From Paraphysomonas bandaiensis (taxonomy: Eukaryota > Protista > Chrysophyceae): a stretch of DNA of 64,000 nt. The position numbers were made by a program, and so were the translations under genes. The stretch lies in assembly GCA_965644295.1 (NCBI GenBank), contig CBFFRP010000041.1:248001-312000 (forward strand), written 5' to 3'. The notes beneath the pieces were generated by a model that searched no databases, had not been told where the DNA came from, and saw nothing but the letters and a program-made list of their open reading frames with translations. Positions within the stretch are counted from its first letter, which is position 1. Every line of letters begins with the position of its first letter. This document shows, in pieces, positions 3,827 to 33,116 of this stretch.

Positions 3827-6800
3827 TTAAGTGTCTGATAGGAGAGGGTGGTCAGTCCGAGTGTTAAATTTCTTAAAGCACTCCAAAGCTTTCACTCGAG
3901 AGCGTTTCTTTTCAGTCTCCCCAAATGAGAAGTAGTCGAAATATTTTGATCTCTCCAAATGCCAAAATGCCAATCCCAATGTGAAGGAAGAATATTCTTC
4001 AGGGAAAAGGCCTAAACAAATGGCTGGGAGTGAGCCGTGCGACGCGTGTTTGTCCTCTGCCACAGCCAATTTCATGTTCAAAGCCTCAGTTAGAAGGGAG
4101 AGTACGGGAAATGTCCGCGAGAGTTGACACACAGCTTTCACCCCATTACTACTACATTTGCGTAAGCGGTGCAATAACCCGCCACCTGGACGACATCCCA
4201 TAATGGAATCAAAAACAATGACAAGCTTGAGGGCACAATATGTCGAGATAAAAAGAGAAAATATACCAATCGGCGTCACTTGTTCATATTGAGCTAACTT
4301 TGTAGCGGAGAAAATCACCGTCTCAACGCAATGATCTCTAGTTGAAGCTGTGCTGCTTAAATAATCCCTCCGACACACTCCAAGAAGACCCCAGAGGCAC
4401 GTGGTGTATAGGTGGCCACTGCCTCCTTTCTGCAAAGTGTCTAAATTTGCTAGTAACTTTTGCATCTGATTCCATTCCCCTCTAAATACACAAACCACAA
4501 CAGTAAAAAGTGATGTCCACATAGACATGGTCTTATGCTCGCGGTGCGATCGATCTACAGAGTGGAGAATGTTCTCTGCTTCCGATACATTTCCACTAAA
4601 GAAGCACAGCCACGCCGACATGTTCCAAACCATGTACTTCAGAGGACTGGAGTCTTTGCGGATCACAGAGCCCGTCAGAGCACAATTCAGATGCTCAAGT
4701 GCGCTTTCTATGGCTCCCATAGCTGCTTGTCTTATACCCAAATGAAAATTCAAATTTGCACTCCCAAGTGCACATTTTGACCGCGGAGTCAGAATGGAAC
4801 ATTTGGCTAAGAGCCGGTTAGATTTCCTTGAGTGCTTCTTTACATAGTGGAGAGTGGAGAGAAGTGCCATAACAGACGAAGTCATATTTAAATCAGACTT
4901 GTGTACAAGAAACGAGCTTGTGGATGCGAACTTCAAAGCTTCACCTACCTTTCCCCGCATCATTAAAGACTGTGCTTGATAATACAGCATTGCTCCGAAT
5001 GCAGTTTTCCCTGGCATTTTCAATAGTCGCGTTGAAAATTTGACAATTACTTTAGGCATGGTTGTACATAAATTCAGTCCATGCAAACATAAAAGCGCCA
5101 TATTGAAACTTTCACGAAAGTCACACATCTTGTACTTCAGAATACTCATCTCTGCTATTATGCAGTACAGTTGGATGTCTGAAATGAAAGGCTGCGCCGA
5201 ATGAAAATTCCTCTTTAAATCTGTAGGTGCCAAATATTTTTCACTGGCTAGTAGGTTATCAAAATGAATTTTCGGTCGACGGGTTTTACGATTATACTTC
5301 CTTCTAATTGATTTAGGGTAACAGGAGCACATAATCTCATCAATGGTCTGCCCTTTCGATGCAAGTGTTACAAGGTGGTGATAGTAGTTGTACGAGGCTG
5401 AGTGCATATTCTCCTGCTTAGTGCTTGCAGCAGCGAGTTCTGTGTACATTATTTCCTTCGCCACGTCATTCGCTCGAGAGTAGTGAAACGCAAGAAGCTC
5501 CACGACATTGCAAGTCGGAGACCTCATATCCAAAGACTCAGCCAAAATAGTCGCTACTATCGTATGGGCAGATTCTCGTTGCTTCTCCAGCATGATATTG
5601 TACACACTATCTGAATACCTGCGGTCTGAAAATGCATAGGTTTTATTTGAACCCATCTCTGTTCGTCTCCTTCTCAAGCTAGAGAGGCGAAATGTCCCGT
5701 CTTTTACAACATTATCGTAAGTAACATTACAACAAAATAAATAGCCTACCTTTGTAGTAATCTGCTCCTGCAACCCGCTGTATAAGTCCTCGATCTTCTA
5801 TCTCAGACAGTGCTTGGTCGAGGTATCTCGCAGTATCTATATATCCCATCCGTTCTAAAGTCTGCTGTAACAGATTCCGGGTAAATATCGTTCCACATAC
5901 AGCGGCAACCTTGAGAACCACCTGGTTGTCGTAGTTCATGCTGTCGAATTGCTCAAGTGCGGTGCCATCAACTGCGTTCTTCTGAGTCTCACCAGTAGCA
6001 GAGAAATTAGATCGGGCCACGGAAGCTTCCAGTTCTTTCACCTGTCTCATAACCATTCCAACAATACCCTTGGCGCTCTTGTGGTACACATTCGATACAA
6101 ATGCATCAGATACCGCGTTGGGCATACATTGTAACAACACAGGCCCCAGGACGTTTTCTATGATAATCTTGATATCGGCCGCACTTATTGGTTTTAAATT
6201 GATCACTTCACACAAATTGTCCAGTTCTTCGACTGTATTTAGTACTACACTCCCTTCAAACGACTCCGCACGCATATGATGGGGTTTGCGGCCAAGAGGG
6301 ATAAACGGCCTCATGCTGCCCACAAAGAAAAGAGTGTCACTCGTGTCTAGAATACGCTTTATAATATGAAATGAAGGTTTATCTGCCCACTGCAATTCTT
6401 CTATCACTAACGCCCCCAAAGAGCACTGTTTGCCAAAGCCAGATACAATTTCGACGATCATTATCTCTAACAAAGCTGGAATACGCTCTGATGTCACAGT
6501 CGCAACGAGCTCCACATCGGGGCGGGTTTTGGTGTCCAGCGCGATTCTTAATAGAGGCAAGACTTCCATGATATTAAATACAGTATCACCTTCTGGAGGA
6601 GAGGTGTCATTATCGCTACTTGATAATTTGGTAAAACCAGAGTGCGATTGACATACAAACGAGCGCATACTATTAGCTACCGACGAGAAGCCATCCACCG
6701 GTTCGAAATCCTCCAGAGTATCTTCGGTGGTGGTCATGCCACCGCAATCAAAAGTGACATTGCTTAAATTATTCTGCACCCACACATATATCCGATCGTA

Positions 6801-16671: not shown

Positions 16672-17452
16672 CTATAGGTTATAGATAAGGTAGTTTTATT
16701 TCAGCTTCTGCATAGGATCGGTTTATTATTCTTTAGTTTTTAAATGTAATATCCACATATCCACAACCTGTTCCACTGGCATTAATCAAAGTAGCATTGA
16801 GCATAAAATTTTTATACGTAACTGAATACACTCCGTACTTGAATTAACTATAAAGTCCTCAGCAGCAGTACTACGGTAACTATGTATAGTTGTATAGTGC
16901 ACATGAAGTAATTGTTCGCTGTGAGTTATTTCTATTGATTCCATTTTCCAACTCGAACAAAATAATTAATTGCTCTTGTGCAAAAGAAGTCAGAAACAGC
17001 AGCTCGAATTCTATTGCAATAATATCCCTTAGAATAGAAAGCTACTGCTTCTTGATTGCTGTATATTTAAGGATAGTACCTCAAACTACACTTTTAATCT
17101 ATACAGCATCTGATGGGTTTACAACATATTCTTCATTCGATATTCTTTTTCTCGTACCAGAACTAGGTCGTATACATTAATTTAAGCTCCATATATTCTT
17201 CAGCTTTTTCAAACATATATCAATAATAGTGCAACTAAGATATGATATCACTGAAGACTGTATAATGTGTCCGATAGATTTCTCTACTTAATCCTTGCAA
17301 TTCCTCGATTATAACACTCACTCTTACAAACCAATCTACTCCCTGTTGGGAAATTTCCACAACAGATTGACAGAAAAGTATGACATATCTCTACCTCAAT
17401 GTCATCCAATTCAAATTGGTGGCCGGAATATGTCCATCATCTTTGTGCGTGA

Positions 17453-18484
17453 TGTATGTATGTATGTATGTATGTATGTATGTATGTATGTATGTATGTA
17501 TGTATGTATGTATGTATGTATGTATGTATGTATGTATGTATGTATGTATGCATGTATGTATGTATGTATGTATGTATGTATGTATGTATGTATGTATGTA
17601 TGTATGTATGTATGTATGTATGTATGTATGTATGTATGTATGTATGTATGTATGTATGTATGTATGTATGTATGTATGTATGTATGTATGTATGTATGTA
17701 TGTATGTATGTATGTATGTATGTATGTATGTATGTATGTATGTATGTATGTATGTATGTATGTATGTATGTATGTATGTATGTATGTATGTATGTATGTA
17801 TGTATGTATGTATGTATGTATGTATGTATGTATGTATGTATGTATGTATGTATGTATGTATGTATGTATGTATGTATGTATGTATGTATGTATGTATGTA
17901 TGTATGTATGTATGTATGTATGTATGTATGTATGTATGTATGTATGTATGTATGTATGTATGTATGTATGTATGTATGTATGTATGTATGTATGTATGTA
18001 TGTATGTATGTATGTATGTATGTATGTATGTATGTATGTATGTATGTATGTATGTATGTATGTATGTATGTATGTATGTATGTATGTATGTATGTATGTA
18101 TGTATGTATGTATGTATGTATGTATGTATGTATGTATGTATGTATGTATGTATGTATGTATGTATGTATGTATGTATGTATGTATGTATGTATGTATGTA
18201 TGTATGTATGTATGTATGTATGTATGTATGTATGTATGTATGTATGTATGTATGTATGTATGTATGTATGTATGTATGTATGTATGTATGTATGTATGTA
18301 TGTATGTATGTATGTATGTATGTATGTATGTATGTATGTATGTATGTATGTATGTATGTATGTATGTATGTATGTATGTATGTATGTATGTATGTATGTA
18401 TGTATGTATGTATGTATGTATGTATGTATGTATGTATGTATGTATGTATGTATGTATGTATGTATGTATGTATGTATGTATGTA
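17453..18484. repeat. (TATG)n microsatellite, ~1.03 kb
   Basis: Near-perfect tetranucleotide array with one CATG variant at 17551. Confidence 0.99.
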
Positions 18485-18557
18485 GTAGTATTGTGTAGCT
18501 AGGTATGTGGATTTGCTCTTCTTTACTTCCACAGTAGCATATCGTCTAGTTGGAACC

Positions 18558-19256
18558 ATGATGTATCTAGCACTACTCAGCAGTGTCTTTTTGACCACAT
18601 CGATGGCGTGGTTGTTCGATGCACCCGCTCCATTGGACTCTAGGACGAGTATATTCGAGTTCTCTGCAGCTGATATTAAGGGCGATCTTGTCGACTTTTC
18701 AACTCTACGCGGGAAGAAAGCGTATCTAATCGTCAATGTTGCAAGCCAATGAGGCATGACTAATACCAACTATGAAGAGCTTAACTATCTATATGAAAAG
18801 TATTCTTCAGTTGGGTTGGAGATCATCGCTTTTCCCTGTATGTGGTAACACCTCACTGATAGTGAGCAACTGCTAATTTGATATCAGGTAATAAGTTTTT
18901 ATACCAAGAGCCAGGATCTAATGACGAAATATTGGAGTTCACGCGATCAAAGAACGTCAACTTTCCGGTCATGGCTAAAGTAGATTGTGGTGTTTCATCG
19001 AATGCTCATCCGATCTTCCCTTTCCTCTGTCAGAAGCTCCCTGATTCAGGACTTTTACCTGGAATTCTTGGCAACGGAATAAAATGGAACTTTAGCAAGT
19101 TTTTATGTGACAGTGAAGGTATTCCACTGAAAAGATATTCGCCGAACGAGAGCCCGAAGTCCTTTGAATCTGATATTGTTCGGCTTTTAGAAGACGTAAG
19201 TATATATTGAACATCTTGGTAATCACTAAATGTCATTATTTTAGAGGGAGCTTTAA
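18558..19256 (+). CDS. GPX: Selenocysteine-containing glutathione peroxidase (PHGPx-like) with signal peptide; 3 exons
   Basis: [11 protein letters not shown](18750-18752)[10 protein letters not shown]...[17 protein letters not shown]...IKWNFSKFL; the TGA is at the catalytic Cys/Sec position and the frame continues. Introns at 18838-18887 and probably 19196-19244 (C-terminus ...LLEDREL*). Confidence 0.93.
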
Positions 19257-20254
19257 CTGCATTGTGTGGTTCATGGGGTTTTGGGGTGGTTGTGTTTGTC
19301 TTATCAGAATGACGACTTTTGAATAGTTTGAAATGATAAGAAAATACAGGAAGCGCCACTCCTAATACGTTGCTTGAAATATAAGATAAAACACTGAGCA
19401 CTAAGCGATATAAACTAAAGTAAAAATGGATAGCTACGACAGCTGTAAGTGCGGGATATCTCTAGACTATAGACTAGGTTTGAACAACTTATGGTCTTAT
19501 GCAAAAGACACTGAGACATAGTTTCATATGACGAGTTTGCTTAGCTTTTCGACAGAAGTTGTGTTTGTTGTCAAGCAGTCACTCTTAGTAGAAATTACTT
19601 CTGATACTATTTCACGACCACGACATACTCCCGGACAACGTTTAGGTAGAGATTATAACTGATAATTCAGTTATTATATACATTATACACATGATTATAT
19701 TACATGGGAACAGACGATCATACTGCATACTCTAGCCTCTACAAACTCCCTGTTGTATACATGCAATGCACAATACTTTATCTTCGCATTTAAATGAGAG
19801 TTGAAAAGTTTCTAATGACCAAGTAGGGTGTAGTTTCAAAGCCTCCTTCATTTTCGATGTCATCAGGGCCAACGCATACCTCGCAAGCAATATTGGTTTC
19901 GGGCTTGATTTTGTAAGAGACCTCCTAAATAAAATATATATACTATATATTCAACCTACTACACTTTTAATATTATATTGTCGCTTTTGAAAGCTAATCA
20001 ATCCATGTAACCGGATGCATACTTCAATTAATTTTGAATGAATGTGGTGGTAATAACAGTGCCAATTATGGTTCAGAGAACGAATAGGAGGAAAGTTGTG
20101 ACTGCAGCTAGGCAGGAGGTAGTCTGTGACTGGTATCGTAGTTCGTAGTTCGTCGTGGTTTTGGTTATCATGTATGTGATCGATCTTATTGACAAGTACT
20201 AAATATTAAATATGGAATCTACGCAAGTGTTTAATTACTAAATAGCGATACTAC

Positions 20255-20348
20255 CATATTGCAATAGTATTGAGTAAAAAAACCATCAATATTATTGTTA
20301 AGACGCTAGTCTAACAATAGTATTGTAATATATTATTCCCTAGCCCTG
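20255..20348 (-). mobile_element. Isolated hAT-like terminus (CAGGGCTAGGGAA... read leftwards)
   Basis: atagtattgtaatatattattccctagccctg is nearly identical to atagtattgcaatatattgttccctagccttg at 46494-46525. Confidence 0.6.
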
Positions 20349-20997
20349 CAAGATAGTGGGGCCAACAGCGCCTTTTGTCCCACGGCTGTGGATAATTGTA
20401 GACAAAGAGCGATATAAGTGTTGCGCTTGATTTTGTAAGAAATCTCCCACCACATATATATATACTAAGGAACCAATACAATAGTGATTAGTAATCTGTT
20501 AAAATGCACCAGCTTAACACCTAACCATGTGCTTGCAATTCAGGTGACCTAGATCCACAATAGGAAATAGGGCATGCGCATGCGGTGTGTACACGTGTAC
20601 ACTGCTGTAGGAACGGGATTGCTAGAAAAGATGCCTCAGTATGACACTCCTCTCCTGATTCTGATTGTGAAATGAAGTTCTGAGGTGTTTGTTCTAAGGA
20701 TCATATGCAGAAATTCGGGGTGCCTCAACGTAGAAGTCTGTTGTCAGGTACCGGGTACATCTGCTGGGTAATTAATCACCATATAGGAGAGCACAATTTA
20801 TGACAAAAATAAATTGTGACTACGATTACTGAATTCGAAATGTTTACATGTAGAGCAAATTTAACTTCAGTGAAATGTCTAATTCTAACAAGGCGTATGT
20901 CAGTAAACGTTTAATTCATCATTTTGTATAATTCAACATACACAGATATATTATATATAGGTATAAGATATAGTGTATAAAAACTTCTTTTTGTAAT

Positions 20998-22251
20998 GGG
21001 ATCTATTATTGAACCTAGTCAAATTGGTGTAATTTCCTAGTCACACCAAAATTGGTGTAAAAACCTAGTCAAGCGGTTGAAAAACCTAGTCATTTAATAA
21101 TTCATATTTTCAGTTTACAATGACTAGGTTTTATGGTATTCACCTAGTCAAAAATAAAAATTTTCATTCAAACATGGGAGCATACTCTATCCATCAATTG
21201 ATAAATGTAGATATTGTATACATGCAATACATAACATTATAACGTTGCATTCCAATGAGAAATTGGTGACCATGTCCGGTGCAATTCCATAGCTTCCCAA
21301 GGGCCATGACATCGGTGGGTCACCGTTGATGAGGGACCTCGCTGATGATGCTGATGTTCTGATGACACACTCATGATGCTGTAAGACTGATGACACACTC
21401 ATGATGCTGATGTTCTGATGACACACTCATGATACTGTAAGACTGATGACACACTCATGATGCTGTAAGACTGATGACACACTCATGATACTGTAAGACT
21501 GATGACACACTCATGATACTGTAAGACTGATGACACACTCATGATGCTGTAAGACTGATGACACACTCATGATACTGTAAGACTGATGACACACTCATGA
21601 TGCTGTAAGACTGATGACACACTCATGATACTGTAAGACTGATGACACACTCATGATGCTGATGTTCTGATGCTGCTCTGCAGTCCACTTCAATGATACT
21701 GCTTTTAGAAGTTTGTTCCCTGAAAACCTCCTTTTTTTTCCGTTGGACTAAAAATAGGGAGATTTATGCACCCCTGAAAGCCAATGCAGCAATCGAAGTC
21801 ATTCATTCAGTGCTGAAGTGAAGGAAGATGAGCGCCATCACTCCCAGCATATGAAGATCTCAAGATGTCCTGCGGATCATAGAGTGAGTTATGCCCACAG
21901 CTTCATGGACCCTCCTCCCCATAACACTCACAGGGACCATCGCTATATGCATACATGCTACAGATAGGCTAGATAGATATACACGTACATCTGTGTTATG
22001 TAGATATGTATATATGAGCTTATTGTTATGTTTGAGTGTTTGTTTTGATGCTCTGTAAGCCACTAATATATTGTGTGGTGTGAGATGGTATCTTAGACAG
22101 TCACAGTGTGTAATCAATGGATATAAGAACGACTAGGTTGAATACCAAAGTTGACTAGGTTGAGTCATTTATTACTTTGACTAGGTTATTCCACCAAAAA
22201 TAGCGTGACTAGGTAATTCAACCAATTTGACTAGGTTGAATAATATTTCCC
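20998..22251. mobile_element. Non-autonomous Mutator-like element (MULE) with 9-bp TSD
   Basis: TIRs gggatctattattgaacctagtcaaattggt and accaatttgactaggttgaataatatttccc. Direct repeat TTTTGTAAT at 20989-20997 and 22252-22260. Multiple subterminal cctagtca motifs at both ends. Confidence 0.9.
21344..21671. repeat. 28-bp minisatellite (11 full units plus partials) inside the MULE
   Basis: Unit gatgacacactcatgat(g/a)ctg(taagact/atgttct) starts at 21361, 21389, 21417 ... 21641. Confidence 0.95.
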
Positions 22252-22561
22252 TTTTGTAATACGTAGTATGAAGGATGAGATTAGAGGCTGATTGGGTTAG
22301 GAATAACGAGTAGAGAGCTCACACTACATTGCAATAATATGCTATAGAAAGTAAAACCAATAACAGAGGACTATTGATAAAATTATGACCGTAAGAAATA
22401 GTCGTAAATAGCGAGTAACTGCTGAATAATTCTAAATACACTAATGAATACACCAACATACACCCTACACATACATAACATGATGCCAGTCCGCTCTACA
22501 ATTGTTGCTCGTCATAATTCACACTACGACGAATCTACGCGTGGTGCCATTATTATTCTAT

Positions 22562-24241
22562 TTACTCAATCGCTAATCGCATCTTCTCAATCTCATCCGA
22601 CTCATTCGGAAAATAAGGACCCAAATGGCGCACCACACCAGATAGAGCAAGCCCAGAGTCTTTGTACACTTCCGTGAAAGAGACTATTCCACTACTCTCA
22701 GTGATTTCAGGAACAATGATGCGGTCAGTTGTTGAGTCAAGTCTGCTAACAGAAAGGTAATACGGCGTCCCGAAAACGTTTATATGTTCAGTAACATCTT
22801 GACATGTGCTGCTCCCATGAACGATCACACATATAACACCCGGAAAACTACTAATATAAGACTCCGATCCAACGAGGTGCGTTGCAGTTATATAAATCGC
22901 TTTGGTAGGTGATGATATGTGTATGTAGTTTAAGTTGAACAGAGACGTGGGCATATGGATGGACCGCAACGTCAAAAAGCGTTCAACATTCAAAGCGTTG
23001 ATGTTATTCTTCACTGCTGAGCATATTATAACACTTTTATACTTTGCGAAGTAGAAGTATGGTCCATACGTGGTAAATGACCGAGTGTAATTACCTTGTA
23101 GAAAATCTAATTCCTGTTGGGCCACCACAGATATAATACCACCATTTGCACGCAATTGGGTCATGTATAAATGCGAAGAATTAGGTGCACTGTGAGCACC
23201 AATTACAAAAAAACTATCAAAGAACTCCACAAATGTAGTGAAATGAGGTCGTTTGGATAGTTCCAAAGGAATGACTTGTGTTCGTCGTAAACAGCCGCCG
23301 TTAAAATCACATTCTCCACTAGAATTCCGGTGGAATGAATAAACCACTGAAGAGCTTCGTCGGTTATCTTCTGTCACAAGTATCTGCCGAGAGGGATCAA
23401 AAGCAATCGAATGTGGACTGCCTAAATCATTGTCTAGCACATACCACTGATGTACGGGGCGATTAATAGATTCACTTACAAGCACACGGTTGTGCCAGCA
23501 GTCAACGATGAAATAAACACCATTATACTCCATCAATTGTGTAGGAGTGTACAATTTGTGACGCCAAGGAGAATATATGTCCACTGTATGTCTTTCATAC
23601 ATCGTCATACGGTTCAGAGACGACGCAGCATCAGAGGCACCGCTATGAGAAATATGGGCTACGTTGAGAGGAAAGGCACTTGACGTACAGACAAGCATAA
23701 AGGTATTTGTCTTCATATCCTCATATAAATGAACTGTATCAAACAGTGTTTCCAAGAGATTACGCACTTCGTTTAAGGACTGCTGATTAGATTCAAGGGT
23801 GTATGTGCCTTCTACTTCAATGTACACAACAAATCGAGAACATTGTTTCAAATGATGTGCATACATTAATAGCATGCTCATGTCCGACCTCTCTACCGAA
23901 TATTCCGGTGAGTCAAGTGTAGATATATTAGAACTAATTGTGACGTAAATCCCATCCCATAAGTTGTTACTGGAACACAACTCCCGCTCCCTTTGGCTGT
24001 GTGCAGATCCGTACAGATCATGCAGACTCGGATAGGAATCCACCACAGAAAAACCATCACTACCCGCGTGATGAGCTATATGAATACAGCTATGTGAAAT
24101 ATATGAGAGCCCGACATCAGCTTGAGGTAATACACCTGAGCAGACATACTCTACCCGCTGACCACTATCACTATGAGCCAGACCAGATACACACAGCAAC
24201 AGACACAGCGATATCACTCCATACCATACCATGTAGCACAC
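22562..24241 (-). CDS. Secreted protein with a C-terminal beta-propeller-like domain; intronless
   Basis: 559-aa ORF with a hydrophobic signal peptide (VISLCLLLCVSGLA). Propeller-like blades: YTPTQL...YFIVDCWHNRVLVS...LGSPHSIAFD...RPHF. Confidence 0.8.
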   Translation of the reverse strand: MCYMVWYGVISLCLLLCVSGLAHSDSGQRVEYVCSGVLPQADVGLSYISHSCIHIAHHAGSDGFSVVDSYPSLHDLYGSAHSQRERELCSSNNLWDGIYVTISSNISTLDSPEYSVERSDMSMLLMYAHHLKQCSRFVVYIEVEGTYTLESNQQSLNEVRNLLETLFDTVHLYEDMKTNTFMLVCTSSAFPLNVAHISHSGASDAASSLNRMTMYERHTVDIYSPWRHKLYTPTQLMEYNGVYFIVDCWHNRVLVSESINRPVHQWYVLDNDLGSPHSIAFDPSRQILVTEDNRRSSSVVYSFHRNSSGECDFNGGCLRRTQVIPLELSKRPHFTTFVEFFDSFFVIGAHSAPNSSHLYMTQLRANGGIISVVAQQELDFLQGNYTRSFTTYGPYFYFAKYKSVIICSAVKNNINALNVERFLTLRSIHMPTSLFNLNYIHISSPTKAIYITATHLVGSESYISSFPGVICVIVHGSSTCQDVTEHINVFGTPYYLSVSRLDSTTDRIIVPEITESSGIVSFTEVYKDSGLALSGVVRHLGPYFPNESDEIEKMRLAIE

Positions 24242-24369
24242 TAGTTGAGGTCTACTTCAAGTGTGACAAACAACACACACAAAATATATGCATGAATATA
24301 TATATCTATGCAAGCCAGATATGAGATACGTATACAAGCAACAACACCATAGGAGTCATGTCCGTGTAA

Positions 24370-24719
24370 GTATGTATGTATGTATGTATGTATGTATGTA
24401 TGTATGTATGTATGTATGTATGTATGTATGTATGTATGTATGTATGTATGTATGTATGTATGTATGTATGTATGTATGTATGTATGTATGTATGTATGTA
24501 TGTATGTATGTATGTATGTATGTATGTATGTATGTATGTATGTATGTATGTATGTATGTATGTATGTATGTATGTATGTATGTATGTATGTATGTATGTA
24601 TGTATGTATGTATGTATGTATGTATGTATGTATGTATGTATGTATGTATGTATGTATGTATGTATGTATGTATGTATGTATGTATGTATGTATGTATGTA
24701 TGTATGTATGTATGTATGT
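24370..24719. repeat. (TATG)n microsatellite, ~350 bp
   Basis: Perfect array between two divergently oriented genes. Confidence 0.99.
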
Positions 24720-24797
24720 TCCTGTTGTTCTAGGTGTCGTAAACTCATTCGTTGTTGAGACTTTCTTGCAGTTGTCTTCATTATCTATGCTTGAAGA

Positions 24798-26723
24798 ATG
24801 TTTCGTCCTTCACGTATCTATGTTCGAGTGGCTATAGGGGGTCTCTTGTGTTGCAGTGGAGCGTCTAGTGCATGCAACAGCAGCGACTATAGTCATGACC
24901 TCAGAAGATACAAGTATGTTGTAATTGGGGCAGGAGCTTCTGGACGCGCTGCAATCCAGGAAATTGCCCAAGATGATTCTCCTGATTTCAACATGCTTGT
25001 AGTGGATAGGATTAAGCAGCGCCACGTCACCAGCACTGCCAGATCACACATCGAACATACAGATAAAGAAATAGCCCACATTAACATCCCGCAACATTCG
25101 ATTTCATTTACCGACGGTGAAACTGTTGCCTATAACAAATGTCTTATAGCAATAGGCCGTAATTTCGGCTTTCAAGAGCGGCACAGTCTTGTGGACGACG
25201 AGTGCAGAACCAAAGTAATGTGCGTAGGTGACAATGGGGCCATAACACGTGCAGTTGAAATTGTGCAGTCTGGGGGCCATGTTACATTGCTAGGTGGGTC
25301 TTGGACGGGAGTAGCCCTTGCAAGCTATCTTACGGTGGAAGCGAGACGTAAAGGATACGTGGGCGCTGTCACATTGATAGCACCCTCTACGGGACTCCTG
25401 AATGACATTTTGCCGCATTATCTAAGCCGTGCCGTTGAGCAACGCCTCAAGTCATCTGGGGTGGAAGTTGTCACATATACCCAGGTGCGCTATGTAGGTA
25501 ATAGTGACACACTTCATTCGTATGCGCTTCCATCGCTAAGCCCTACGAATGTTGAAACGAATGGTTTGGATAGGGAGTGGAAAGAATGCCTGGGTATACA
25601 TTGCGCCGCAACACACGATACGCTTCGCACTTCAATGTTTGCAACGGATGCTGTACTCTTATGTACTGAATGTGGAAACACAGCTCCAAAATTGTCTTCT
25701 TCCACTCCGGGCCAATCGAGCGGCGCTTTATCCCTTTCTTCGGGAAACGCATTTGTGTTCAACTCTGGTTTAGAAATCGACCAGTTTGGGTGTGTAGTTG
25801 CCAATCCCTCCTTGCTCGCTGCTCAGGACGTTTATGTTGCTGGAGACATAGCGAGCGCTCCGTCGGCATTGGGGCGCGGTTTTTCTGTCGGTCTGCTTGG
25901 TGCTTTGTCGAGTGGCATTGCTGCTGGAAGAAATATGCGCTTGGACGGGAGCGTCGACGCTACCACCAACCCTACAGTCACGAACTCTTTTATTCCTACT
26001 TACCATGGAACTGTTCCCGCCCTGGGAATGAACATTCGACTTATTGGAGACTGCTCTAACACGTATATGACATATGGATTCTGGTGGAAGGATCCGGAAT
26101 GCCAGTCACGAACACTGTCGCGAAGTAATGAAAAGTTTACTTATGAGACCCACCATGGTGGTTACCCGAAATCTATACTTGATATGTCACGCACTTATGG
26201 CAAGCTGTTATCTCGTGCTCTACCAGAACCTGACCCTCCTAAGGAAGGGCAGGCTAGTGACCTTCTAGGCATCGGGGTTGTGTTTTATATTAACTCTGAC
26301 GCGGTAATTTCCGGAGTGGCAGTGTGTGGCAGTGGACCAGAAGAACATAGCAGTAACATTAATAGACTCTTAGATGTCTACTCGCAGGCAGAGTTGCTTA
26401 TAGGAAAGAAAACTGCATCGTTAGAATCTTCGGGCAATGACGACAAAGGGAAGCGTATAGTTGGTATGCTTAATACCGGTAATGTTTCTGGGGAAACTAG
26501 TGCTTCGATGAGGCGGTCGCTGCAGGAAACCGCTTGTCAAATGTATGAGCGAATATACCCTGATGAAATGACTAGTGCACCAACCCCTCGTCTGAGGTTT
26601 ACTGCTCCCAGTAGATCAAAAATGATGAGAGAAGTGCGGTCAGGAAAAGGGAATAGACTTCCTTGGAGATTTTCGATACATAGTTCGCTGGAAACGGAAA
26701 ATATATTTTACAGAAAAACGTAA
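24798..26723 (+). CDS. AIF-like (AIFM1-family) FAD-dependent pyridine nucleotide-disulfide oxidoreductase-fold protein
   Basis: YVVIGAGASG (FAD Rossmann), YNKCLIAIG, ILPHYLS...LKSSGVEV, SGLEIDQFGCVVAN...DVYVAGDIAS and a C-terminal GIGVVFY. Arg-rich N-terminus resembling a mitochondrial presequence. Confidence 0.8.
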   Translation: MFRPSRIYVRVAIGGLLCCSGASSACNSSDYSHDLRRYKYVVIGAGASGRAAIQEIAQDDSPDFNMLVVDRIKQRHVTSTARSHIEHTDKEIAHINIPQHSISFTDGETVAYNKCLIAIGRNFGFQERHSLVDDECRTKVMCVGDNGAITRAVEIVQSGGHVTLLGGSWTGVALASYLTVEARRKGYVGAVTLIAPSTGLLNDILPHYLSRAVEQRLKSSGVEVVTYTQVRYVGNSDTLHSYALPSLSPTNVETNGLDREWKECLGIHCAATHDTLRTSMFATDAVLLCTECGNTAPKLSSSTPGQSSGALSLSSGNAFVFNSGLEIDQFGCVVANPSLLAAQDVYVAGDIASAPSALGRGFSVGLLGALSSGIAAGRNMRLDGSVDATTNPTVTNSFIPTYHGTVPALGMNIRLIGDCSNTYMTYGFWWKDPECQSRTLSRSNEKFTYETHHGGYPKSILDMSRTYGKLLSRALPEPDPPKEGQASDLLGIGVVFYINSDAVISGVAVCGSGPEEHSSNINRLLDVYSQAELLIGKKTASLESSGNDDKGKRIVGMLNTGNVSGETSASMRRSLQETACQMYERIYPDEMTSAPTPRLRFTAPSRSKMMREVRSGKGNRLPWRFSIHSSLETENIFYRKT

Positions 26724-27543
26724 AATAGAGCGATACACATCACTTTTGTTAATACAATATACACCTGTAATATGGACTCGAATGTCGAGTTTCATTACAT
26801 AATAGGAGTATGATGTGAAGATGTATATAATGAATTCATTAATAAAGTGTACCGCGAACTGAATCAATACAGGAGATACCCTTGTTGAGTGTTGAGTCAA
26901 CCTTATATATAGCTTTGGTCGATTAATACTGACTATAATATAATAAAACGACTTTCTTTATGTGTGCACTACTTTTATTGTTAATGTTTATAGTGTTATT
27001 CCTCTACTATCATCATAAAGGGGTAGGGAGGCAGGGAAGATGACATCCTTACTAGTAGAGGCACACAGAACACACACAAGCAATGTATAGAATTATATTA
27101 AAATCCAGGCGTATTATTTGCGTGTCTGCACTAAACAAGCTCCAGCTAAATCTATACTATACTTACATGACTTACATTCTGGGGAGGAGAAAAGAGGGGC
27201 CTCATCCAATATCCAATGATACGCTAGGCCTCAGTGAGGCATACATGGTCACGAAAAGCTCCGTTTAATCTTTGTTAGAGGATTGAAAGGTGAACATGTC
27301 TTCCTTGCTAAATTTGCGAGATTTTCATACATAAGTCTTGCGTAGTATAAGAAATAAGAAATCCCGCGTAATCTTTGTGAGGGCGAACACGGATGGGGCA
27401 GTAGGGTGGCTCGCATAGAATCTAAGATATGGTGAACGGGTGGGTGGCTGCGTAGTATCAGCGCAATATATACTGTCGCTTTAGACCATTACAGATTCGA
27501 ACAATCCCCCTTCTCCCGCTGTGTGTGTAGAGCAGTACTTCTA

Positions 27544-28070
27544 GGGAAATATTATTTAACCTAGTCAATTTAGTTCATAATGTCAAACTTTGATAATATC
27601 CATTGATTACACATTGTCACTCTACTGTCTAAGATACCAGCTCACTCCACACAACATATTAATGCCTTGCATATCAACAAAACAAACATTCAAACGTTCA
27701 AACATAACAATTAATTTATACATACATATCTACTTAACAATTAATACATGAACTCGCCGATGTCATAACCCATGTGAAAGCTGTGAAACTGCACTAGACT
27801 TAGTCACGAGAAACTGTCCAATTCTCATTGGAATGCAAAGATAAATGTAATGTATTGAATATATACAATACCTGCATTCATTAATTGATGGCTAGAGTAT
27901 GCTTCCTTGTTTGAGTGAATAAAAATATATCTGACTAGGTGAATACCGTAAACACCTAGTCAACCTGGCCAGCCTAGTCATTGCAAACTAAAAATATGAA
28001 TTATTAAATGACTAGGGTTTAGACCACTTGACTAGGTTCTTTCACCAATACTAGTGTGACCAGGAAATCC
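27544..28070 (-). mobile_element. Inverted, internally deleted second member of the MULE family at 20998-22251
   Basis: Begins gggaaatattatttaacctagtcaa. Blocks 27600-27740 and 27819-28066 are diverged reverse complements of ~22000-22125 and ~21030-21265. It lacks the minisatellite core. Confidence 0.85.
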
Positions 28071-28445
28071 CACTTGAAGTGTGACTGATTCGCCACAGAT
28101 ACAAAAACAATCACGGGTTAACATATCACTACACAACGAGCAAGTAGTATGCTACATTTATGAAGAGCTGAGCTGTGCTTAGTATTCTCTGACAATCGTA
28201 AAGCAGACAGCGGGTGTCCCTATGATCTCAAACACGTAAAGACACTGTCGTATAAGGTATGAATCATATTAAGAGCCTCTCTGGGATCAAAAATTATAAG
28301 ACTGAACTCATGTGACTGTCTCATACAACAAACCTCACTGTAATTCATAAGCACCACACTCCATCCCCAATCCAAGCAATCCAGATCTGGATCCATCCCA
28401 CACAAGTATACCGAATACTACAGCAGTATATGCATATATCTATTG

Positions 28446-28448
<3 letters not shown>

Positions 28449-28477
<29 letters not shown>

Positions 28478-29662
28478 TGTATGTATGTATGTATGTATGT
28501 ATGTATGTATGTATGTATGTATGTATGTATGTATGTATGTATGTATGTATGTATGTATGTATGTATGTATGTATGTATGTATGTATGTATGTATGTATGT
28601 ATGTATGTATGTATGTATGTATGCATGTTTGTATGTATGTATGTATGTATGTATGTATGTATGTATGTATGTATGTATGTATGTATGTATGTATGTATGT
28701 ATGTATGTATGTATGTATGTATGTATGTATGTATGTATGTATGTATGTATGTATGTATGTATGTATGTATGTATGTATGTATGTATGTATGTATGTATGT
28801 ATGTATGTATGTATGTATGTATGTATGTATGTATGTATGTATGTATGTATGTATGTATGTATGTATGTATGTATGTATGTATGTATGTATGTATGTATGT
28901 ATGTATGTATGTATGTATGTATGTATGTATGTATGTATGTATGTATGTATGTATGTATGTATGTATGTATGTATGTATGTATGTATGTATGTATGTATGT
29001 ATGTATGTATGTATGTATGTATGTATGTATGTATGTATGTATGTATGTATGTATGTATGTATGTATGTATGTATGTATGTATGTATGTATGTATGTATGT
29101 ATGTATGCATGTTTGTATGTATGTATGTATGTATGTATGTATGTATGTATGTATGTATGTATGTATGTATGTATGTATGTATGTATGTATGTATGTATGT
29201 ATGTATGTATGTATGTATGTATGTATGTATGTATGTATGTATGTATGTATGTATGTATGTATGTATGTATGTATGTATGTATGTATGTATGTATGTATGT
29301 ATGTATGTATGTATGTATGTATGTATGTATGTATGTATGTATGTATGTATGTATGTATGTATGTATGTATGTATGTATGTATGTATGTATGTATGTATGT
29401 ATGTATGTATGTATGTATGTATGTATGTATGTATGTATGTATGTATGTATGTATGTATGTATGTATGTATGTATGTATGTATGTATGTATGTATGTATGT
29501 ATGTATGTATGTATGTATGTATGTATGTATGTATGTATGTATGTATGTATGTATGTATGTATGTATGTATGTATGTATGTATGTATGTATGTATGTATGT
29601 ATGTATGTATGTATGTATGTATGTATGTATGTATGTATGTATGTATGTATGTATGTATGTAT
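28449..29662. repeat. (TATG)n microsatellite, ~1.2 kb, with two identical CATGTTTG interruptions
   Basis: Interruptions at 28624 and 29108. Confidence 0.99.
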
Positions 29663-29738
29663 CTGCAGTTATGGTCAGTTGTTTGCATCTCTGTGTCTCC
29701 GCACCAATGCAATAGCCAATAACCACCACTCCTAGGCT

Positions 29739-32700
29739 ATGAACGGCATAATGACTTCCCTGACAGAGGAGGGTCTGCTGAGTAGTGTGCTAGAGGAGTC
29801 TAAGATCGGCATGAACCCCTATAAGGACCCCCCCTTTCATGTCATATCTTCCACCTTTCAGAGCTACTGTCAGCGCTATAGTATCGACACTCACATGGAG
29901 AACCATTGCTATAAGGCCCTGCTACTGTTCACTGCCGACAGTGATGTGTCTTGGTCTCAGCGGATGGCTAAAATCGCAAAGTATGTGAGAGCTGCACACA
30001 GTCGTCAGTCCCCGAAACAATCCGGTCCTTCCGTACACGCCACTGAGAAAGACACGAGACATATATATCAATCTCCGCAGCAGTATGTGACAGAAGATTG
30101 GAAATCTTCACCTAGCATAGGAAAGATGTCTCCTAATCGGACGCCAGAGACCTATCAATCAAGGATGAAGCGCAGTGAGTTAGGTGTCTCCCGAGCGAGT
30201 GATATTGCCGAAGGTATGTTTCTTTCGTCCTTTCTTAATAGCCCTTCTCCACAGCCACTTGCCCATATGGGCACAGATATGAGTGTTGCCCGTTCACCTC
30301 CAGTGGAAGCATCTAGGAAGAGTATCTCTTTTGGAAATATGCAGACTCCTGTGGGACAAGGTAACGTGTCAGCGTCGCCATCTCCTCTCACAACCTCTCG
30401 TTTCTCTTCGTTTCGGCCAAGTTCATCATCATCACCTTTGGTATTCTCTAGCCCCATGACTGGGATCCCCACTCTTTCTAATGCCACTTCCTCGCGACAC
30501 TTGGATACCCCTAGCCCATCCTGCACCGGACGCCCTTGCAGATTAATGCAAAAGGCGGAGAAACACTGGGCTATTAAACGGATGCGACATGCGCTTTGCT
30601 TATGGCTTTGGTACCGCAATCTCCGCCGAGGACAACCGAGCACTGAACAACCATCTGTATCTCGCCTCGCGGAGCAATCTGCCCGGTCTCAAATTTTACA
30701 TCTCAGAAGCGTGGCGGCTACTGCGCATGGCTTGTCGTACTCTGCCGCCACAGGTACCCTTCGACGTACATCCGTCCTTGACAGTGTTGACCCTATCCCC
30801 ACTGCTTCTAGCATACGAATGTTAGTTCTTTTCCAGAAGTATTTTGCGGGGAAGCCAATCGGAAGCTTTGCTCACGCTACAAAGCGCCACCCCGCCCCGT
30901 CATTATACCTTCATTTCTGCAAGCTTTCTTCTCGTTGGGGTGATGAGGATGACCAGGAAAAGTGGTTACGTGCACGCATGCATGCATTTGTACAGATGGA
31001 AACTATGGATATATTCTTTCGTATCTGGACTGAACAGATAGCTCGAATCAACCAGGCACGTGCATTCTATATCACGAAGAGTCTGCGCAGAGGTCTGGAA
31101 GGCTTACAAGATTTTACTCTGGCTCGGGAGTTCCCTCGGTACGGAAAACGGAACGTAGGTGGCGCTCGACATTATTTCATACGTCAAGTGAAAAGGTGTT
31201 TTAATGTCCTACGTGTGCTCTTGAAATCTCGCCGTACAATGCGCTCCCGGTATATTACTTCAGACGGGTATTTAGGTGATCGTCTTTCGTCGAAACTGTT
31301 TTGCATTTGGAGAAATCGGTGCGTGACACGGTTTCGGCATGCTACATATATCTCTGTGAGCGATATGCATTGCAACCAAGCTGTGGCATCCCTTCTCCGT
31401 GCTTTCTTTAACAGATTCTACACCCGCACAATGCTATACCCTCAAGCTCATATACTAGCTAGGAGGCGTACAACCCGGCTAAAGAAGAAGTGTATGTGGG
31501 GATGGATGGGATGCTTTTTCCATCGTAAACTTGATCGTCGTCCTCCAGGGAAATCCATACGGGCACTTGATATTCTTCCTAACGATTATATATATACGTT
31601 CATTCACTGGTATAAGTGGAGACTTCAGGTTCACAGATATGTTCAGACTGATAGACTGGCATGCCGTCGTGCGGATAAATTCTGGAGAACCCGCCGAGGT
31701 CGTCATGCCTTCCTCTGCATGCGAGCCAATAAAATGTCTCGGATGAGAACTAAATCTGAAGAGATAAAATGTCTCCGTCGTGCAAGACCGGAATCCGTCA
31801 CCACTCTGGATGGAATCATATGTTACGTAATGCTGAAACGCTGGCGACTGTTTACTCGGATTAGGAAAGCAAACACTGCATTTGTACTAGGCTGTACTAA
31901 GAAAGTACGCATGCTGCATGGGTTTCCTGTAAATAATGGTCGAACTATCAAGGGGTGTGTTGGTGAAAAAGGCCACAAGGTGTTAGGTGCTAAAGCATTT
32001 GCGTTGGTTCGACAAAATAGTTTTGGAATCGGTAATCCAAATGAGGAACCTCCGGAAACAGATATCCGTGTTATTGGGTCGTGGAAAAAGTTCATGAAGA
32101 GAATCCGGAAGCAACAGCGTGTTAAAACAGTGGAATACACATGTGATATAGTGTTTTTACGAAAACGATTCAAACGTATGCGTAGAGTGCTTGTTATGTC
32201 TCGGGGACACAGGCTGCTGCGATGTGCTCGGACTTCAGAAGTATTTTACACGTGGAAGTACGTCAAGACTATTGCTGCTTCTCGGCGTCACAGGTTGACT
32301 CGAGTGTGGCACTTTATGAAAATCTACAGTGCTATGCGAAGAAGGGTTGGTATATGGTACACAAAGACCGCCCTTCCTAAGGTTAGAAGAGCATTCTTGC
32401 TATTACGGCAATACACAGATCAATGCAACAAAGCTGACTTACTTGTTCACGAGCTATGCTGTACTTACAGGCTGAAGTCTGTGTTTGTCTGGTGGATGAT
32501 GTTACTGAAGGCGGAGAAGTTCTTTTGCTTCAGCACACTGAAGCGAGTTATGGTGACGAAATTCGCTCGGCAGCGAGACCGAAAGCGGTTAGAAAGAAAG
32601 GCGGCTCTTCGCAGGCAGCTTCTGCGCTTACGGCGACTGACTCTTTGTCACACCGCGCGTCGAAAGGTCGCCGCAACTCTGCAACGCTACCGGGCTTCAG

Positions 32701-33116
32701 TAAACCTCTTGAGGAAACTACAACGATTCTTCAAAAAAAGAAGCAAGGAAAGGATTCGCCAGACCACAGCTTTGAGGCATTGCACTATCAAGAGTGTGGG
32801 GTATGCCCTTTCTCGGTGGATGGAATTTGCAACAATGTCTGTTTGTAAGCGTATCAGCACTAATATATCTATTTTGTCGATGGCTTTGTGGAAAGTGATT
32901 TACAAAATCAATGCCAGGTTTTCTCAACAGAGAATACTCTTCATTGCAGAAAGGTTTTATATCCGACAGAGTGCCCGCCTGCATTTGAAGCGGTGGTATT
33001 GGCAAATGAAACGTCAGTCCAGAATTCGAATGAATAACAGACAGGGGTTGCATTATTATAAGCGGAAAAATCAGGCATTTGTTGTTACATTGCTTCGCAA
33101 CTTAGCCATGTATTAG
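29739..33116 (+). CDS. Large Arg/Lys-rich protein with a Ser/Pro-rich N-region and recurring Trp/Phe motifs (Sfi1-like, putative centrin-binding)
   Basis: 1125-aa intronless ORF with recurring motifs such as ALCLW, FFRIW, LFCIW, MLKRW, ALSRW and HLKRW. The ORF is solid; the family call is tentative. Confidence 0.6.
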   Translation: MNGIMTSLTEEGLLSSVLEESKIGMNPYKDPPFHVISSTFQSYCQRYSIDTHMENHCYKALLLFTADSDVSWSQRMAKIAKYVRAAHSRQSPKQSGPSVHATEKDTRHIYQSPQQYVTEDWKSSPSIGKMSPNRTPETYQSRMKRSELGVSRASDIAEGMFLSSFLNSPSPQPLAHMGTDMSVARSPPVEASRKSISFGNMQTPVGQGNVSASPSPLTTSRFSSFRPSSSSSPLVFSSPMTGIPTLSNATSSRHLDTPSPSCTGRPCRLMQKAEKHWAIKRMRHALCLWLWYRNLRRGQPSTEQPSVSRLAEQSARSQILHLRSVAATAHGLSYSAATGTLRRTSVLDSVDPIPTASSIRMLVLFQKYFAGKPIGSFAHATKRHPAPSLYLHFCKLSSRWGDEDDQEKWLRARMHAFVQMETMDIFFRIWTEQIARINQARAFYITKSLRRGLEGLQDFTLAREFPRYGKRNVGGARHYFIRQVKRCFNVLRVLLKSRRTMRSRYITSDGYLGDRLSSKLFCIWRNRCVTRFRHATYISVSDMHCNQAVASLLRAFFNRFYTRTMLYPQAHILARRRTTRLKKKCMWGWMGCFFHRKLDRRPPGKSIRALDILPNDYIYTFIHWYKWRLQVHRYVQTDRLACRRADKFWRTRRGRHAFLCMRANKMSRMRTKSEEIKCLRRARPESVTTLDGIICYVMLKRWRLFTRIRKANTAFVLGCTKKVRMLHGFPVNNGRTIKGCVGEKGHKVLGAKAFALVRQNSFGIGNPNEEPPETDIRVIGSWKKFMKRIRKQQRVKTVEYTCDIVFLRKRFKRMRRVLVMSRGHRLLRCARTSEVFYTWKYVKTIAASRRHRLTRVWHFMKIYSAMRRRVGIWYTKTALPKVRRAFLLLRQYTDQCNKADLLVHELCCTYRLKSVFVWWMMLLKAEKFFCFSTLKRVMVTKFARQRDRKRLERKAALRRQLLRLRRLTLCHTARRKVAATLQRYRASVNLLRKLQRFFKKRSKERIRQTTALRHCTIKSVGYALSRWMEFATMSVCKRISTNISILSMALWKVIYKINARFSQQRILFIAERFYIRQSARLHLKRWYWQMKRQSRIRMNNRQGLHYYKRKNQAFVVTLLRNLAMY

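What the first reader, a model, noticed from the sequence alone, without database searches (positions are those of the whole stretch)
17453..29739. Three large (TATG)n arrays each end 73-78 nt upstream of a start codon: a candidate expandable microsatellite promoter element
Array ends and the next ATG are 18484/18558 (GPx, 73 nt between), 24719/24798 (AIF-like, 78 nt) and 29662/29739 (Sfi1-like, 76 nt). In all three TATG is on the coding strand, although the arrays range from ~0.35 to ~1.2 kb. Randomly placed microsatellites should not share an offset within 5 nt. This suggests the array's 3' edge is tied to the core promoter/TSS, for example a factor-binding motif that slips and expands upstream and might tune expression by copy number (inference from three cases).
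Basis: partly seen in the sequence, partly recalled or inferred. Interest (0 to 1): 0.8.

Follow-up and report, generated by a model that had tools for sequence, protein, structure and literature searches.

The report
TATG repeat arrays abutting gene promoters
Three kilobase-scale (TATG)n repeats really do end 73-78 bases before three start codons, but in a sample of this marine protist's genome such repeats sit next to gene starts in either orientation and at 45-270 bases, so they are promoter-side repeats and not a fixed-distance, strand-specific promoter element.

Summary
The arrays lie at 17452-18484, 24365-24719 and 28448-29662, are 99% pure, and end 73, 78 and 76 nt before the first possible ATG of a selenocysteine GPx, a Pyr_redox_2 (AIF-like) gene and an 1125-aa ORF.

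- **Abundance:** (TATG)n makes up about 0.8-0.9% of the 62.5-Mb genome, equally on both strands.
- **Promoter-side bias:** in 299 kb that I could read (42 arrays), 21 of 65 confident ORFs have an array within 500 nt upstream of the ATG. None has one within 500 nt downstream of the stop (p about 1e-6).
- **No strand rule:** 18 genes lie on the TATG strand and 14 on the CATA strand.
- **No 75-nt peak:** ATG-to-array distances run from 45 to 265 nt.
- **RNA evidence:** the AIF-like mRNA starts 40-42 nt after array 2, so the array is not in the mRNA. Another gene's mRNA starts 204 nt after its array.
- **Length instability:** two duplicated arrays with about 99% identical flanks are 625 and 1445 nt long.

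Best reading: an unstable, lineage-specific microsatellite confined to untranscribed promoter-side DNA, here pressed against three core promoters. The shared offset is about the minimal promoter plus 5'UTR room, plus some coincidence.

The scan found this array class before on other pieces of this genome.

The parts
17452..18484 (+). (TATG)n array 1, about 258 units, 99% pure
   Evidence: TRF; sequence
18485..18557 (+). 73-nt unique spacer between array 1 and the GPx ATG (core promoter plus 5'UTR, inferred)
   Evidence: sequence; no RNA evidence obtained (one search found only distant GPx relatives)
18558..19256 (+). Selenocysteine glutathione peroxidase gene. In-frame TGA at 18750-18752. Two short introns with GTATGT and GTAAGT donors. 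C-terminal DREL.
   Evidence: (Pfam GSHPx)
22562..24232 (-). Divergent 556-aa gene (weak NHL-repeat hit). Its ATG lies 132-137 nt from the 5' edge of array 2.
24365..24719 (+). (TATG)n array 2, about 89 units, between head-to-head genes
   Evidence: TRF; a DNA contig of run X11 crosses the 3' junction
24720..24758 (+). About 40 nt of untranscribed spacer between array 2 and the mRNA 5' end (core promoter, inferred)
   Evidence: RNA contig X2 starts at 24759. JGI transcript contig L053 starts at 24761.
24759..26951 (+). AIF-like (Pyr_redox_2) mRNA: 5'UTR 37-39 nt, ORF 24798-26723, 3'UTR 228 nt
27809..28367 (.). RNA contig without a long ORF. It ends 81 nt from the 5' edge of array 3 and overlaps a dispersed repeat. 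Strand unknown.
28448..29662 (+). (TATG)n array 3, about 304 units
   Evidence: TRF
29663..29738 (+). 76-nt unique spacer between array 3 and the ATG of the 1125-aa ORF
   Evidence: sequence
29739..33116 (+). No Pfam family at E<=0.01.
   Evidence: no transcript on record

Best explanation
The three arrays belong to a genome-wide, lineage-specific class of unstable (TATG)n microsatellites, roughly 900 arrays and about 0.8-0.9% of the DNA.

The arrays are tolerated, or arise, only in the untranscribed DNA on the promoter side of genes. They often lie between head-to-head genes. Otherwise they lie at the gene-proximal end of a long, repeat-rich intergenic stretch.

They grow and shrink by internal slippage. 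This leaves both flanks in place, so array length and edge position are independent.

In this window all three press against a core promoter. About 40 nt of unique DNA lie between the array edge and the transcription start (shown for array 2), followed by a 5'UTR of about 37 nt. That gives 73-78 nt to the ATG.

This spacing is near the lower limit seen elsewhere (45-95 nt in about a third of promoter-proximal arrays, in either orientation). The near-identical offsets therefore reflect the minimal room a core promoter and short leader need, plus some coincidence.

The array is not transcribed into the mRNA and is not itself the promoter, because most genes lack one.

Any positive role is inferred, not shown. 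Candidates are a spacer or barrier, a Z-DNA-prone alternating pyrimidine-purine tract that absorbs negative supercoiling, or nucleosome exclusion.
For: - Arrays and offsets are real.
- A run of ten TATG units matches 62,434 forward and 65,017 reverse positions in 62.56 Mb.
- In 299 kb holding 42 arrays, 21 of 65 confident ORFs have an array within 500 nt upstream of the ATG. None has one within 500 nt downstream of the stop (binomial p = 1e-6).
- Both orientations occur: 18 versus 14.
- Distances run from 45 to 265 nt, with a lower bound near 45-60 nt and a cluster at 61-95 nt on both sides.
- The mRNA 5' end lies at 24759/24761, 40-42 nt after array 2.
- Flanks are unique, so the arrays are not carried by one mobile element.
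- A duplicate pair with about 99% identical flanks has arrays of 625 and 1445 nt.
- Arrays 1 and 3 sit at the gene-proximal end of intergenic regions of about 2.8-3.0 kb. The rest of those regions holds no ORF and some dispersed repeats.
Against: - The sample covers only about 0.5% of the genome and about 5% of the arrays.
- Gene starts were called from ORFs and a codon-usage score, without annotation. Short first exons are therefore missed and some long distances may be overestimates.
- For example, one locus on contig C9 scored 263 nt. By eye it has a plausible start about 72 nt from the array.
- Only two transcription starts next to arrays have RNA evidence. Both come from assembled contigs, which can fall short of the true 5' end.
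- A 0.0015-0.004 chance for the triple is small enough that a real sub-class with a fixed spacing is not excluded.
Confidence: 0.6

Rival explanations
1. The arrays are a functional, expandable promoter element. A factor binds TATG/CATA units, or the tract adopts an unusual DNA structure. This opens chromatin just upstream of the core promoter, and copy number tunes the output of the adjacent gene or gene pair.
For: - Promoter-side location is strong and one-sided.
- The proximal edge lies 40-42 nt from a transcription start.
- Arrays fill the whole gap between several head-to-head gene pairs, with 63/68, about 72/65 and 78/137 nt to the two ATGs.
- Length changes quickly.
- The very high purity suggests ongoing turnover.
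- Promoter tandem repeats that modulate expression are known in yeast and humans (reviewed in PMC3899988; PMC4857002).
Against: - There is no fixed distance and no strand rule.
- One transcript starts 204 nt from its array.
- With about 900 arrays in 62.5 Mb, most genes have none. The window has three arrays among many genes.
- No expression or polymorphism data were obtainable.
Confidence: 0.2
2. The shared offset is coincidence among otherwise neutral microsatellites. The arrays have no relation to promoters beyond lying in non-coding DNA.
For: - The offset agreement is a post-hoc pick from a scan of more than 1,300 windows.
- Distances elsewhere are broad.
- No shared sequence motif was found in the three spacers or in 59 upstream regions.
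Against: - Neutral placement predicts arrays downstream of genes as often as upstream. The counts are 0 versus 21 within 500 nt.
- Arrays 1 and 3 lie at the extreme gene-proximal end of intergenic regions of about 3 kb.
Confidence: 0.12
3. The arrays are tails or internal repeats of a mobile element that inserts upstream of genes, or they are assembly artefacts.
For: - Some arrays lie in larger repeats: a 2,291-nt tandem unit on contig C53 and an inverted duplication on C2.
- Some 9-nt junction words recur.
- A dispersed repeat of about 235 nt lies near several arrays.
Against: - The 500-nt flanks of 42 arrays are otherwise unrelated to each other.
- Array 2 sits between two genes with no room for an element.
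- An independent DNA contig crosses the junction between array 2 and its unique flank.
Confidence: 0.04

Closest known systems
Variable tandem repeats in yeast and human promoters (Vinces et al. 2009, as reviewed in PMC3899988; human promoter repeats as eQTLs, PMC4857002)
   Same: These are repeats enriched just upstream of genes in untranscribed promoter DNA. They are unstable in length and are proposed to tune expression through chromatin.
   Different: - Here a single tetranucleotide unit dominates.
- Arrays reach 0.1-1.4 kb at 99% purity and sum to nearly 1% of the genome.
- No array was seen downstream of a gene in the sample.
- An effect on expression is untested.
Z-DNA-prone alternating pyrimidine-purine tracts such as (TG)n upstream of promoters (my own knowledge, not checked in the papers)
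   Same: TATG is strictly pyrimidine-purine alternating. It lies upstream of transcription starts, where negative supercoiling accumulates.
   Different: The unit is a mix of TA and TG steps, and the arrays are 10-50 times longer than typical (TG)n tracts. No structural evidence exists. Neither single strand folds on its own.
Bacterial contingency loci with tetranucleotide repeats in promoters
   Same: A tetranucleotide repeat next to a promoter, with copy number that can change by slippage.
   Different: Those repeats lie between the -35 and -10 elements or inside ORFs, and they switch genes on and off through spacing or frame. Here the organism is a eukaryote, the arrays lie upstream of the core promoter, and their length does not alter the spacing between promoter and gene.
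Earlier notes of this scan on the same genome (s1-440805, s1-440756, s1-440794)
   Same: The same array class, with the same conclusion that arrays occupy untranscribed promoter gaps and that transcription starts outside them.
   Different: This report tests the specific claims of a fixed 73-78-nt offset and a coding-strand rule, and finds neither in the sample. It adds a paralogous pair of arrays that differ in length.

Membership tests
Promoter-associated variable tandem repeats | The repeat lies in untranscribed DNA upstream of the transcription start | tested here: met
   The mRNA 5' end lies 40-42 nt after array 2. Counts of arrays within 500 nt are 21 of 65 ORFs upstream and 0 of 65 downstream.
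Promoter-associated variable tandem repeats | Repeat number varies between alleles, strains or paralogs | tested here: inconclusive
   A paralogous pair with about 99% identical flanks has arrays of 625 and 1445 nt. These are assembly lengths, not checked with long reads. No strain comparison was possible, because short-read contigs break at the arrays.
Promoter-associated variable tandem repeats | Repeat number changes the expression of the adjacent gene | not testable with these tools
   Only assembled contigs were available, and they give no expression levels.
   The RNA 5' end lies 40-42 nt from the edge at array 2 and 204 nt at L012. ATG distances run from 45 to 265 nt.
   18 genes lie on the TATG strand and 14 on the CATA strand. 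A dihydroxyacetone kinase gene has a CATA-sense array 61 nt upstream of its ATG.
Z-DNA-forming tract | Strict alternation of pyrimidine and purine | tested here: met
   The unit T-A-T-G alternates, and the arrays are 99% pure.
Z-DNA-forming tract | Adopts the left-handed form in vivo or under supercoiling | not testable with these tools
   This needs chemical or antibody probing.
Microsatellite tail of a mobile element | A shared element sequence on one side of every array | tested here: not met
   All-against-all BLAST of the 500-nt flanks of 42 arrays found only local duplicates and one repeat of about 235 nt at variable distance.

The most novel reading that the evidence does not exclude
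(TATG)n arrays are a selected, lineage-specific piece of promoter architecture in this protist. On this reading they are kilobase-long, Z-DNA-prone or nucleosome-excluding tracts. They would act as a spacer or barrier between a core promoter and either its head-to-head partner or neighbouring repeat-rich DNA. Rapid length changes would then tune several hundred genes. A sub-class would be anchored about 40 nt upstream of the transcription start.
Probability: 0.2. Interest if true: 0.8.

Novelty: new variant of a known kind. Interest (0 to 1): 0.45.

Why it matters
If the promoter-side restriction holds genome-wide, nearly 1% of this genome is a single tetranucleotide repeat placed only upstream of genes. 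That is a more extreme and cleaner case of promoter tandem repeats than those known in yeast or humans.

It would give a natural system for asking two questions:
- whether repeat length tunes transcription;
- whether long alternating pyrimidine-purine tracts act as topological or chromatin barriers.

The specific idea of a fixed-distance, strand-specific microsatellite promoter is not upheld in my sample. That narrows what needs testing.

Tried and rejected
- **More genome sequence.** I did not use long N-padded patterns to read further flanks, because that would have gone round the limit.
- **Spliced gene-model search.** A dynamic search for start codons was too noisy to use. It misses the GPx because of its in-frame TGA.
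- **Motif search.** Counting 5-mers in 59 upstream regions gave no convincing core-promoter motif.
- **Transcript look-ups.** Exact look-ups failed for the 1125-aa and 556-aa window proteins. They also failed for ten array-adjacent proteins from other loci.
- **Homology searches for transcripts.** These found the organism's own transcript for only two genes and not for the dihydroxyacetone kinase.
- **Metagenome scans.** Scans for the 1125-aa ORF and the GPx found nothing close.
- **Hairpin model for slippage.** Rejected, because both strands fold with a minimum free energy of 0 kcal/mol.
- **Mobile-element origin.** Rejected, because the flanks are unrelated.
- **Literature.** A search for TATG microsatellites in promoters found nothing relevant, and no paper on this genome turned up.
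Full report
**1. The observation**

Tandem Repeats Finder reports three period-4 arrays in the window: 17452-18484, 24365-24719 and 28448-29662. Each has 99% matches and no indels. All three read TATG on the + strand.

That leaves 73, 78 and 76 nt between array and ATG.

- ATGs 24798 and 29739 are the first possible starts of single-exon ORFs of 641 and 1125 codons. In each case an in-frame stop lies two codons upstream.
- The 641-aa protein carries Pyr_redox_2 (E = 1.6e-14). The 1125-aa protein matches no Pfam family at E<=0.01, so the label 'Sfi1-like' is unverified.
- ATG 18558 opens a glutathione peroxidase with an in-frame TGA at 18750-18752 in the catalytic motif. It has two introns of about 50-60 nt with GTATGT and GTAAGT donors.

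- Out-of-frame ATGs lie inside all three spacers.
- Array 2 is also flanked on its other side by a minus-strand 556-aa gene that starts 132-137 nt away. Even in this window, one array-adjacent gene has CATA on its coding strand.

**2. The genome-wide class**

The window is part of contig C41 of a 62.56-Mb, 669-contig eukaryotic assembly.

A run of ten TATG units matches 62,434 forward and 65,017 reverse positions. This corresponds to about 0.51-0.54 Mb, or 0.8-0.9% of the genome, split equally between the strands.

Merged with the window, this gives 299 kb and 42 arrays of 67-1445 nt. At that mean length the genome holds roughly 900 arrays, so most genes have none.

**3. Where the arrays sit relative to genes**

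No annotation was available. I trained a codon-usage score on 28 long ORFs and called confident ORFs as those with at least 150 codons and at least 35 bits.

- Of 65 such ORFs, 6 have an array within 100 nt upstream of the ATG, 18 within 300 nt and 21 within 500 nt.
- None has an array within 500 nt downstream of its stop. The nearest is 894 nt away.
- The count of 21 against 0 gives p = 1e-6.

Seen from the arrays, ORFs reading outward start near both edges, while ORFs reading inward are almost absent. Arrays are therefore promoter-side features.

Many arrays lie between head-to-head genes and fill nearly the whole gap. Distances to the two ATGs include 63/68, about 72/65, 95/46 and 78/137 nt.

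Others resemble arrays 1 and 3 of the window. They have a gene on one side and more than 1.2 kb without ORFs on the other. In the window those gene-less stretches hold dispersed repeats.

Arrays 1 and 3 lie at the extreme gene-proximal end of intergenic regions of about 2.8-3.0 kb. Random placement would rarely give this.

**4. The two specific claims**

*Strand.* Among edges with a confident gene start within 300 nt, 18 genes lie on the TATG strand and 14 on the CATA strand (p = 0.6).

One CATA-sense case is a dihydroxyacetone kinase gene whose ATG lies 61 nt from the array. Homologs cover 95-99% of the query, which supports that start.

*Offset.* With both orientations pooled, the ATG-to-array distances are 45, 61, 63, 65, 68, 73, 76, 78, 94, 95, 107, 121, 123, 137, 141, 175, 192, 206, 248, 258 and 265 nt.

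- There is a lower bound near 45-60 nt and a loose cluster at 61-95 nt on both sides.
- There is no peak at 73-78 nt. The window's three values are the only ones in 70-80 nt.
- Drawing three distances from the other 18, smoothed, gives a range of 5 nt or less with probability 0.0015-0.004.

This is unusual for one triple. It was also picked after the fact from a scan of more than 1,300 windows.

Caveat: ORF-based starts miss short first exons. One locus scored at 263 nt has, by eye, a plausible start about 72 nt from the array. The true distribution may therefore be somewhat more concentrated at the short end than my numbers show.

**5. RNA evidence**

Only assembled contigs were available. 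Two RNA assemblies place the 5' end of the AIF-like mRNA at nearly the same point.
- A 2,193-nt contig of run X2 covers exactly 24759-26951.
- A 2,191-nt JGI transcript contig that encodes the identical protein starts at 24761.

I could not establish whether these two assemblies are independent. They may derive from the same reads.

The mRNA therefore begins 40-42 nt after the array and has a 5'UTR of 37-39 nt. The array is not in the mRNA. A DNA contig of run X11, in contrast, runs on into the array.

A counter-example comes from contig C16. The transcript contig L054 maps without gaps to L012:4714-3495 on the minus strand, and the TATG-sense 3' edge of the array is at L012:4919. The RNA there starts 204 nt from the array.

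The array edge is therefore not tied to the transcription start as a rule.

An RNA contig without a long ORF lies at 27809-28367, 81 nt from the far edge of array 3. Its strand is unknown and it overlaps a dispersed repeat.

**6. Origin and dynamics**

- All-against-all BLAST of the 500-nt flanks shows that they are unrelated. The exceptions are local duplicates and one repeat of about 235 nt at variable distance, so the arrays are not carried by one mobile element.
- Neither strand of the array folds on its own.
- On contig C2, an inverted duplication with about 99% identical flanks carries arrays of 625 and 1445 nt. If the assembly is right, length changes are fast relative to point substitution.
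- Growth by internal slippage leaves both flanks in place.

**7. Reading**

The best-supported account is an unstable microsatellite class confined to untranscribed promoter-side DNA. In this window, three members press against core promoters.

The spacing of 73-78 nt equals about 40 nt of core promoter plus a leader of about 37 nt for array 2. It lies near the lower limit seen elsewhere.

What keeps the arrays on the 5' side is inferred, not shown. I see three possibilities:
- selection against the repeat in transcribed DNA, since the TATG sense would add an upstream ATG and a GTATGT splice-donor-like word every 4 nt;
- preferential origin in open or negatively supercoiled promoter DNA, since the unit alternates pyrimidine and purine;
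- a positive role as a spacer or barrier.

A functional element that tunes expression remains possible, but it was not testable here.

**8. Prior notes**

The scan had already found this array class on other pieces of the same genome.
- Follow-up notes s1-440805, s1-440756 and s1-440794 reached the same promoter-gap reading.
- One of them names the organism as Paraphysomonas. I did not test that.
- First-reader note s1-452896 proposes a near-fixed distance, which my sample does not support.

Noticed in passing
window 18750-18752, 18839-18887 and about 19186-19244: The GPx has an in-frame TGA (selenocysteine) in the NVASQ-U-G motif. It has two introns of about 50-60 nt with GTATGT and GTAAGT donors, and a spliced-on DREL C-terminus. 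The GTATGT donor word is the same as the array repeat read in the TATG sense.
   Followed up: partly
window 27809-28367: RNA contigs of runs X1 and X2 cover a stretch with no ORF above 61 aa. It ends 81 nt from the 5' edge of array 3 and overlaps a dispersed repeat (27818-28068). It may be a divergent non-coding transcript or repeat-derived RNA.
   Followed up: partly
window 21359-21661: A 28-nt tandem repeat of 10.8 copies at 94% identity. It lies in a stretch (20998-22251) that also matches other loci of the genome.
   Followed up: no
L003 (G000:C2:61500-71499) 4028-5760, and 8760 onward: An inverted duplication with about 99% identical flanks. Its two (TATG)n arrays are 625 and 1445 nt long, and each faces a copy of the same gene start 175 nt away.
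   Followed up: yes
G000:C53:1174-8079 (positions only): Four array junctions spaced exactly 2,291 nt apart, which suggests a 2.3-kb tandem repeat whose units each contain a (TATG)n array. A related unit of about 2.4 kb lies between two arrays in L022 (2606-5038).
   Followed up: no
Genome-wide array junctions listed: The first bases after the 3' edge are often TACAGC, TACAGA, TACTGC or GACTGC, far more often than expected. Several arrays pass into (TAGG)n, (TG)n or (TGAA)n at their edges, for example in L046-L051 on C41:206273-207458.
   Followed up: no
L036, L012, L005 and L044 flanks: A dispersed repeat of about 235 nt at about 76% identity lies 100-400 nt from several arrays, on their gene-less side and in either orientation.
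   Followed up: no
window 24743-24874: DNA run X11 and RNA run X2 share several single-base differences from the assembly, in the spacer and at the start of the AIF-like gene. This indicates another allele or strain.
   Followed up: no
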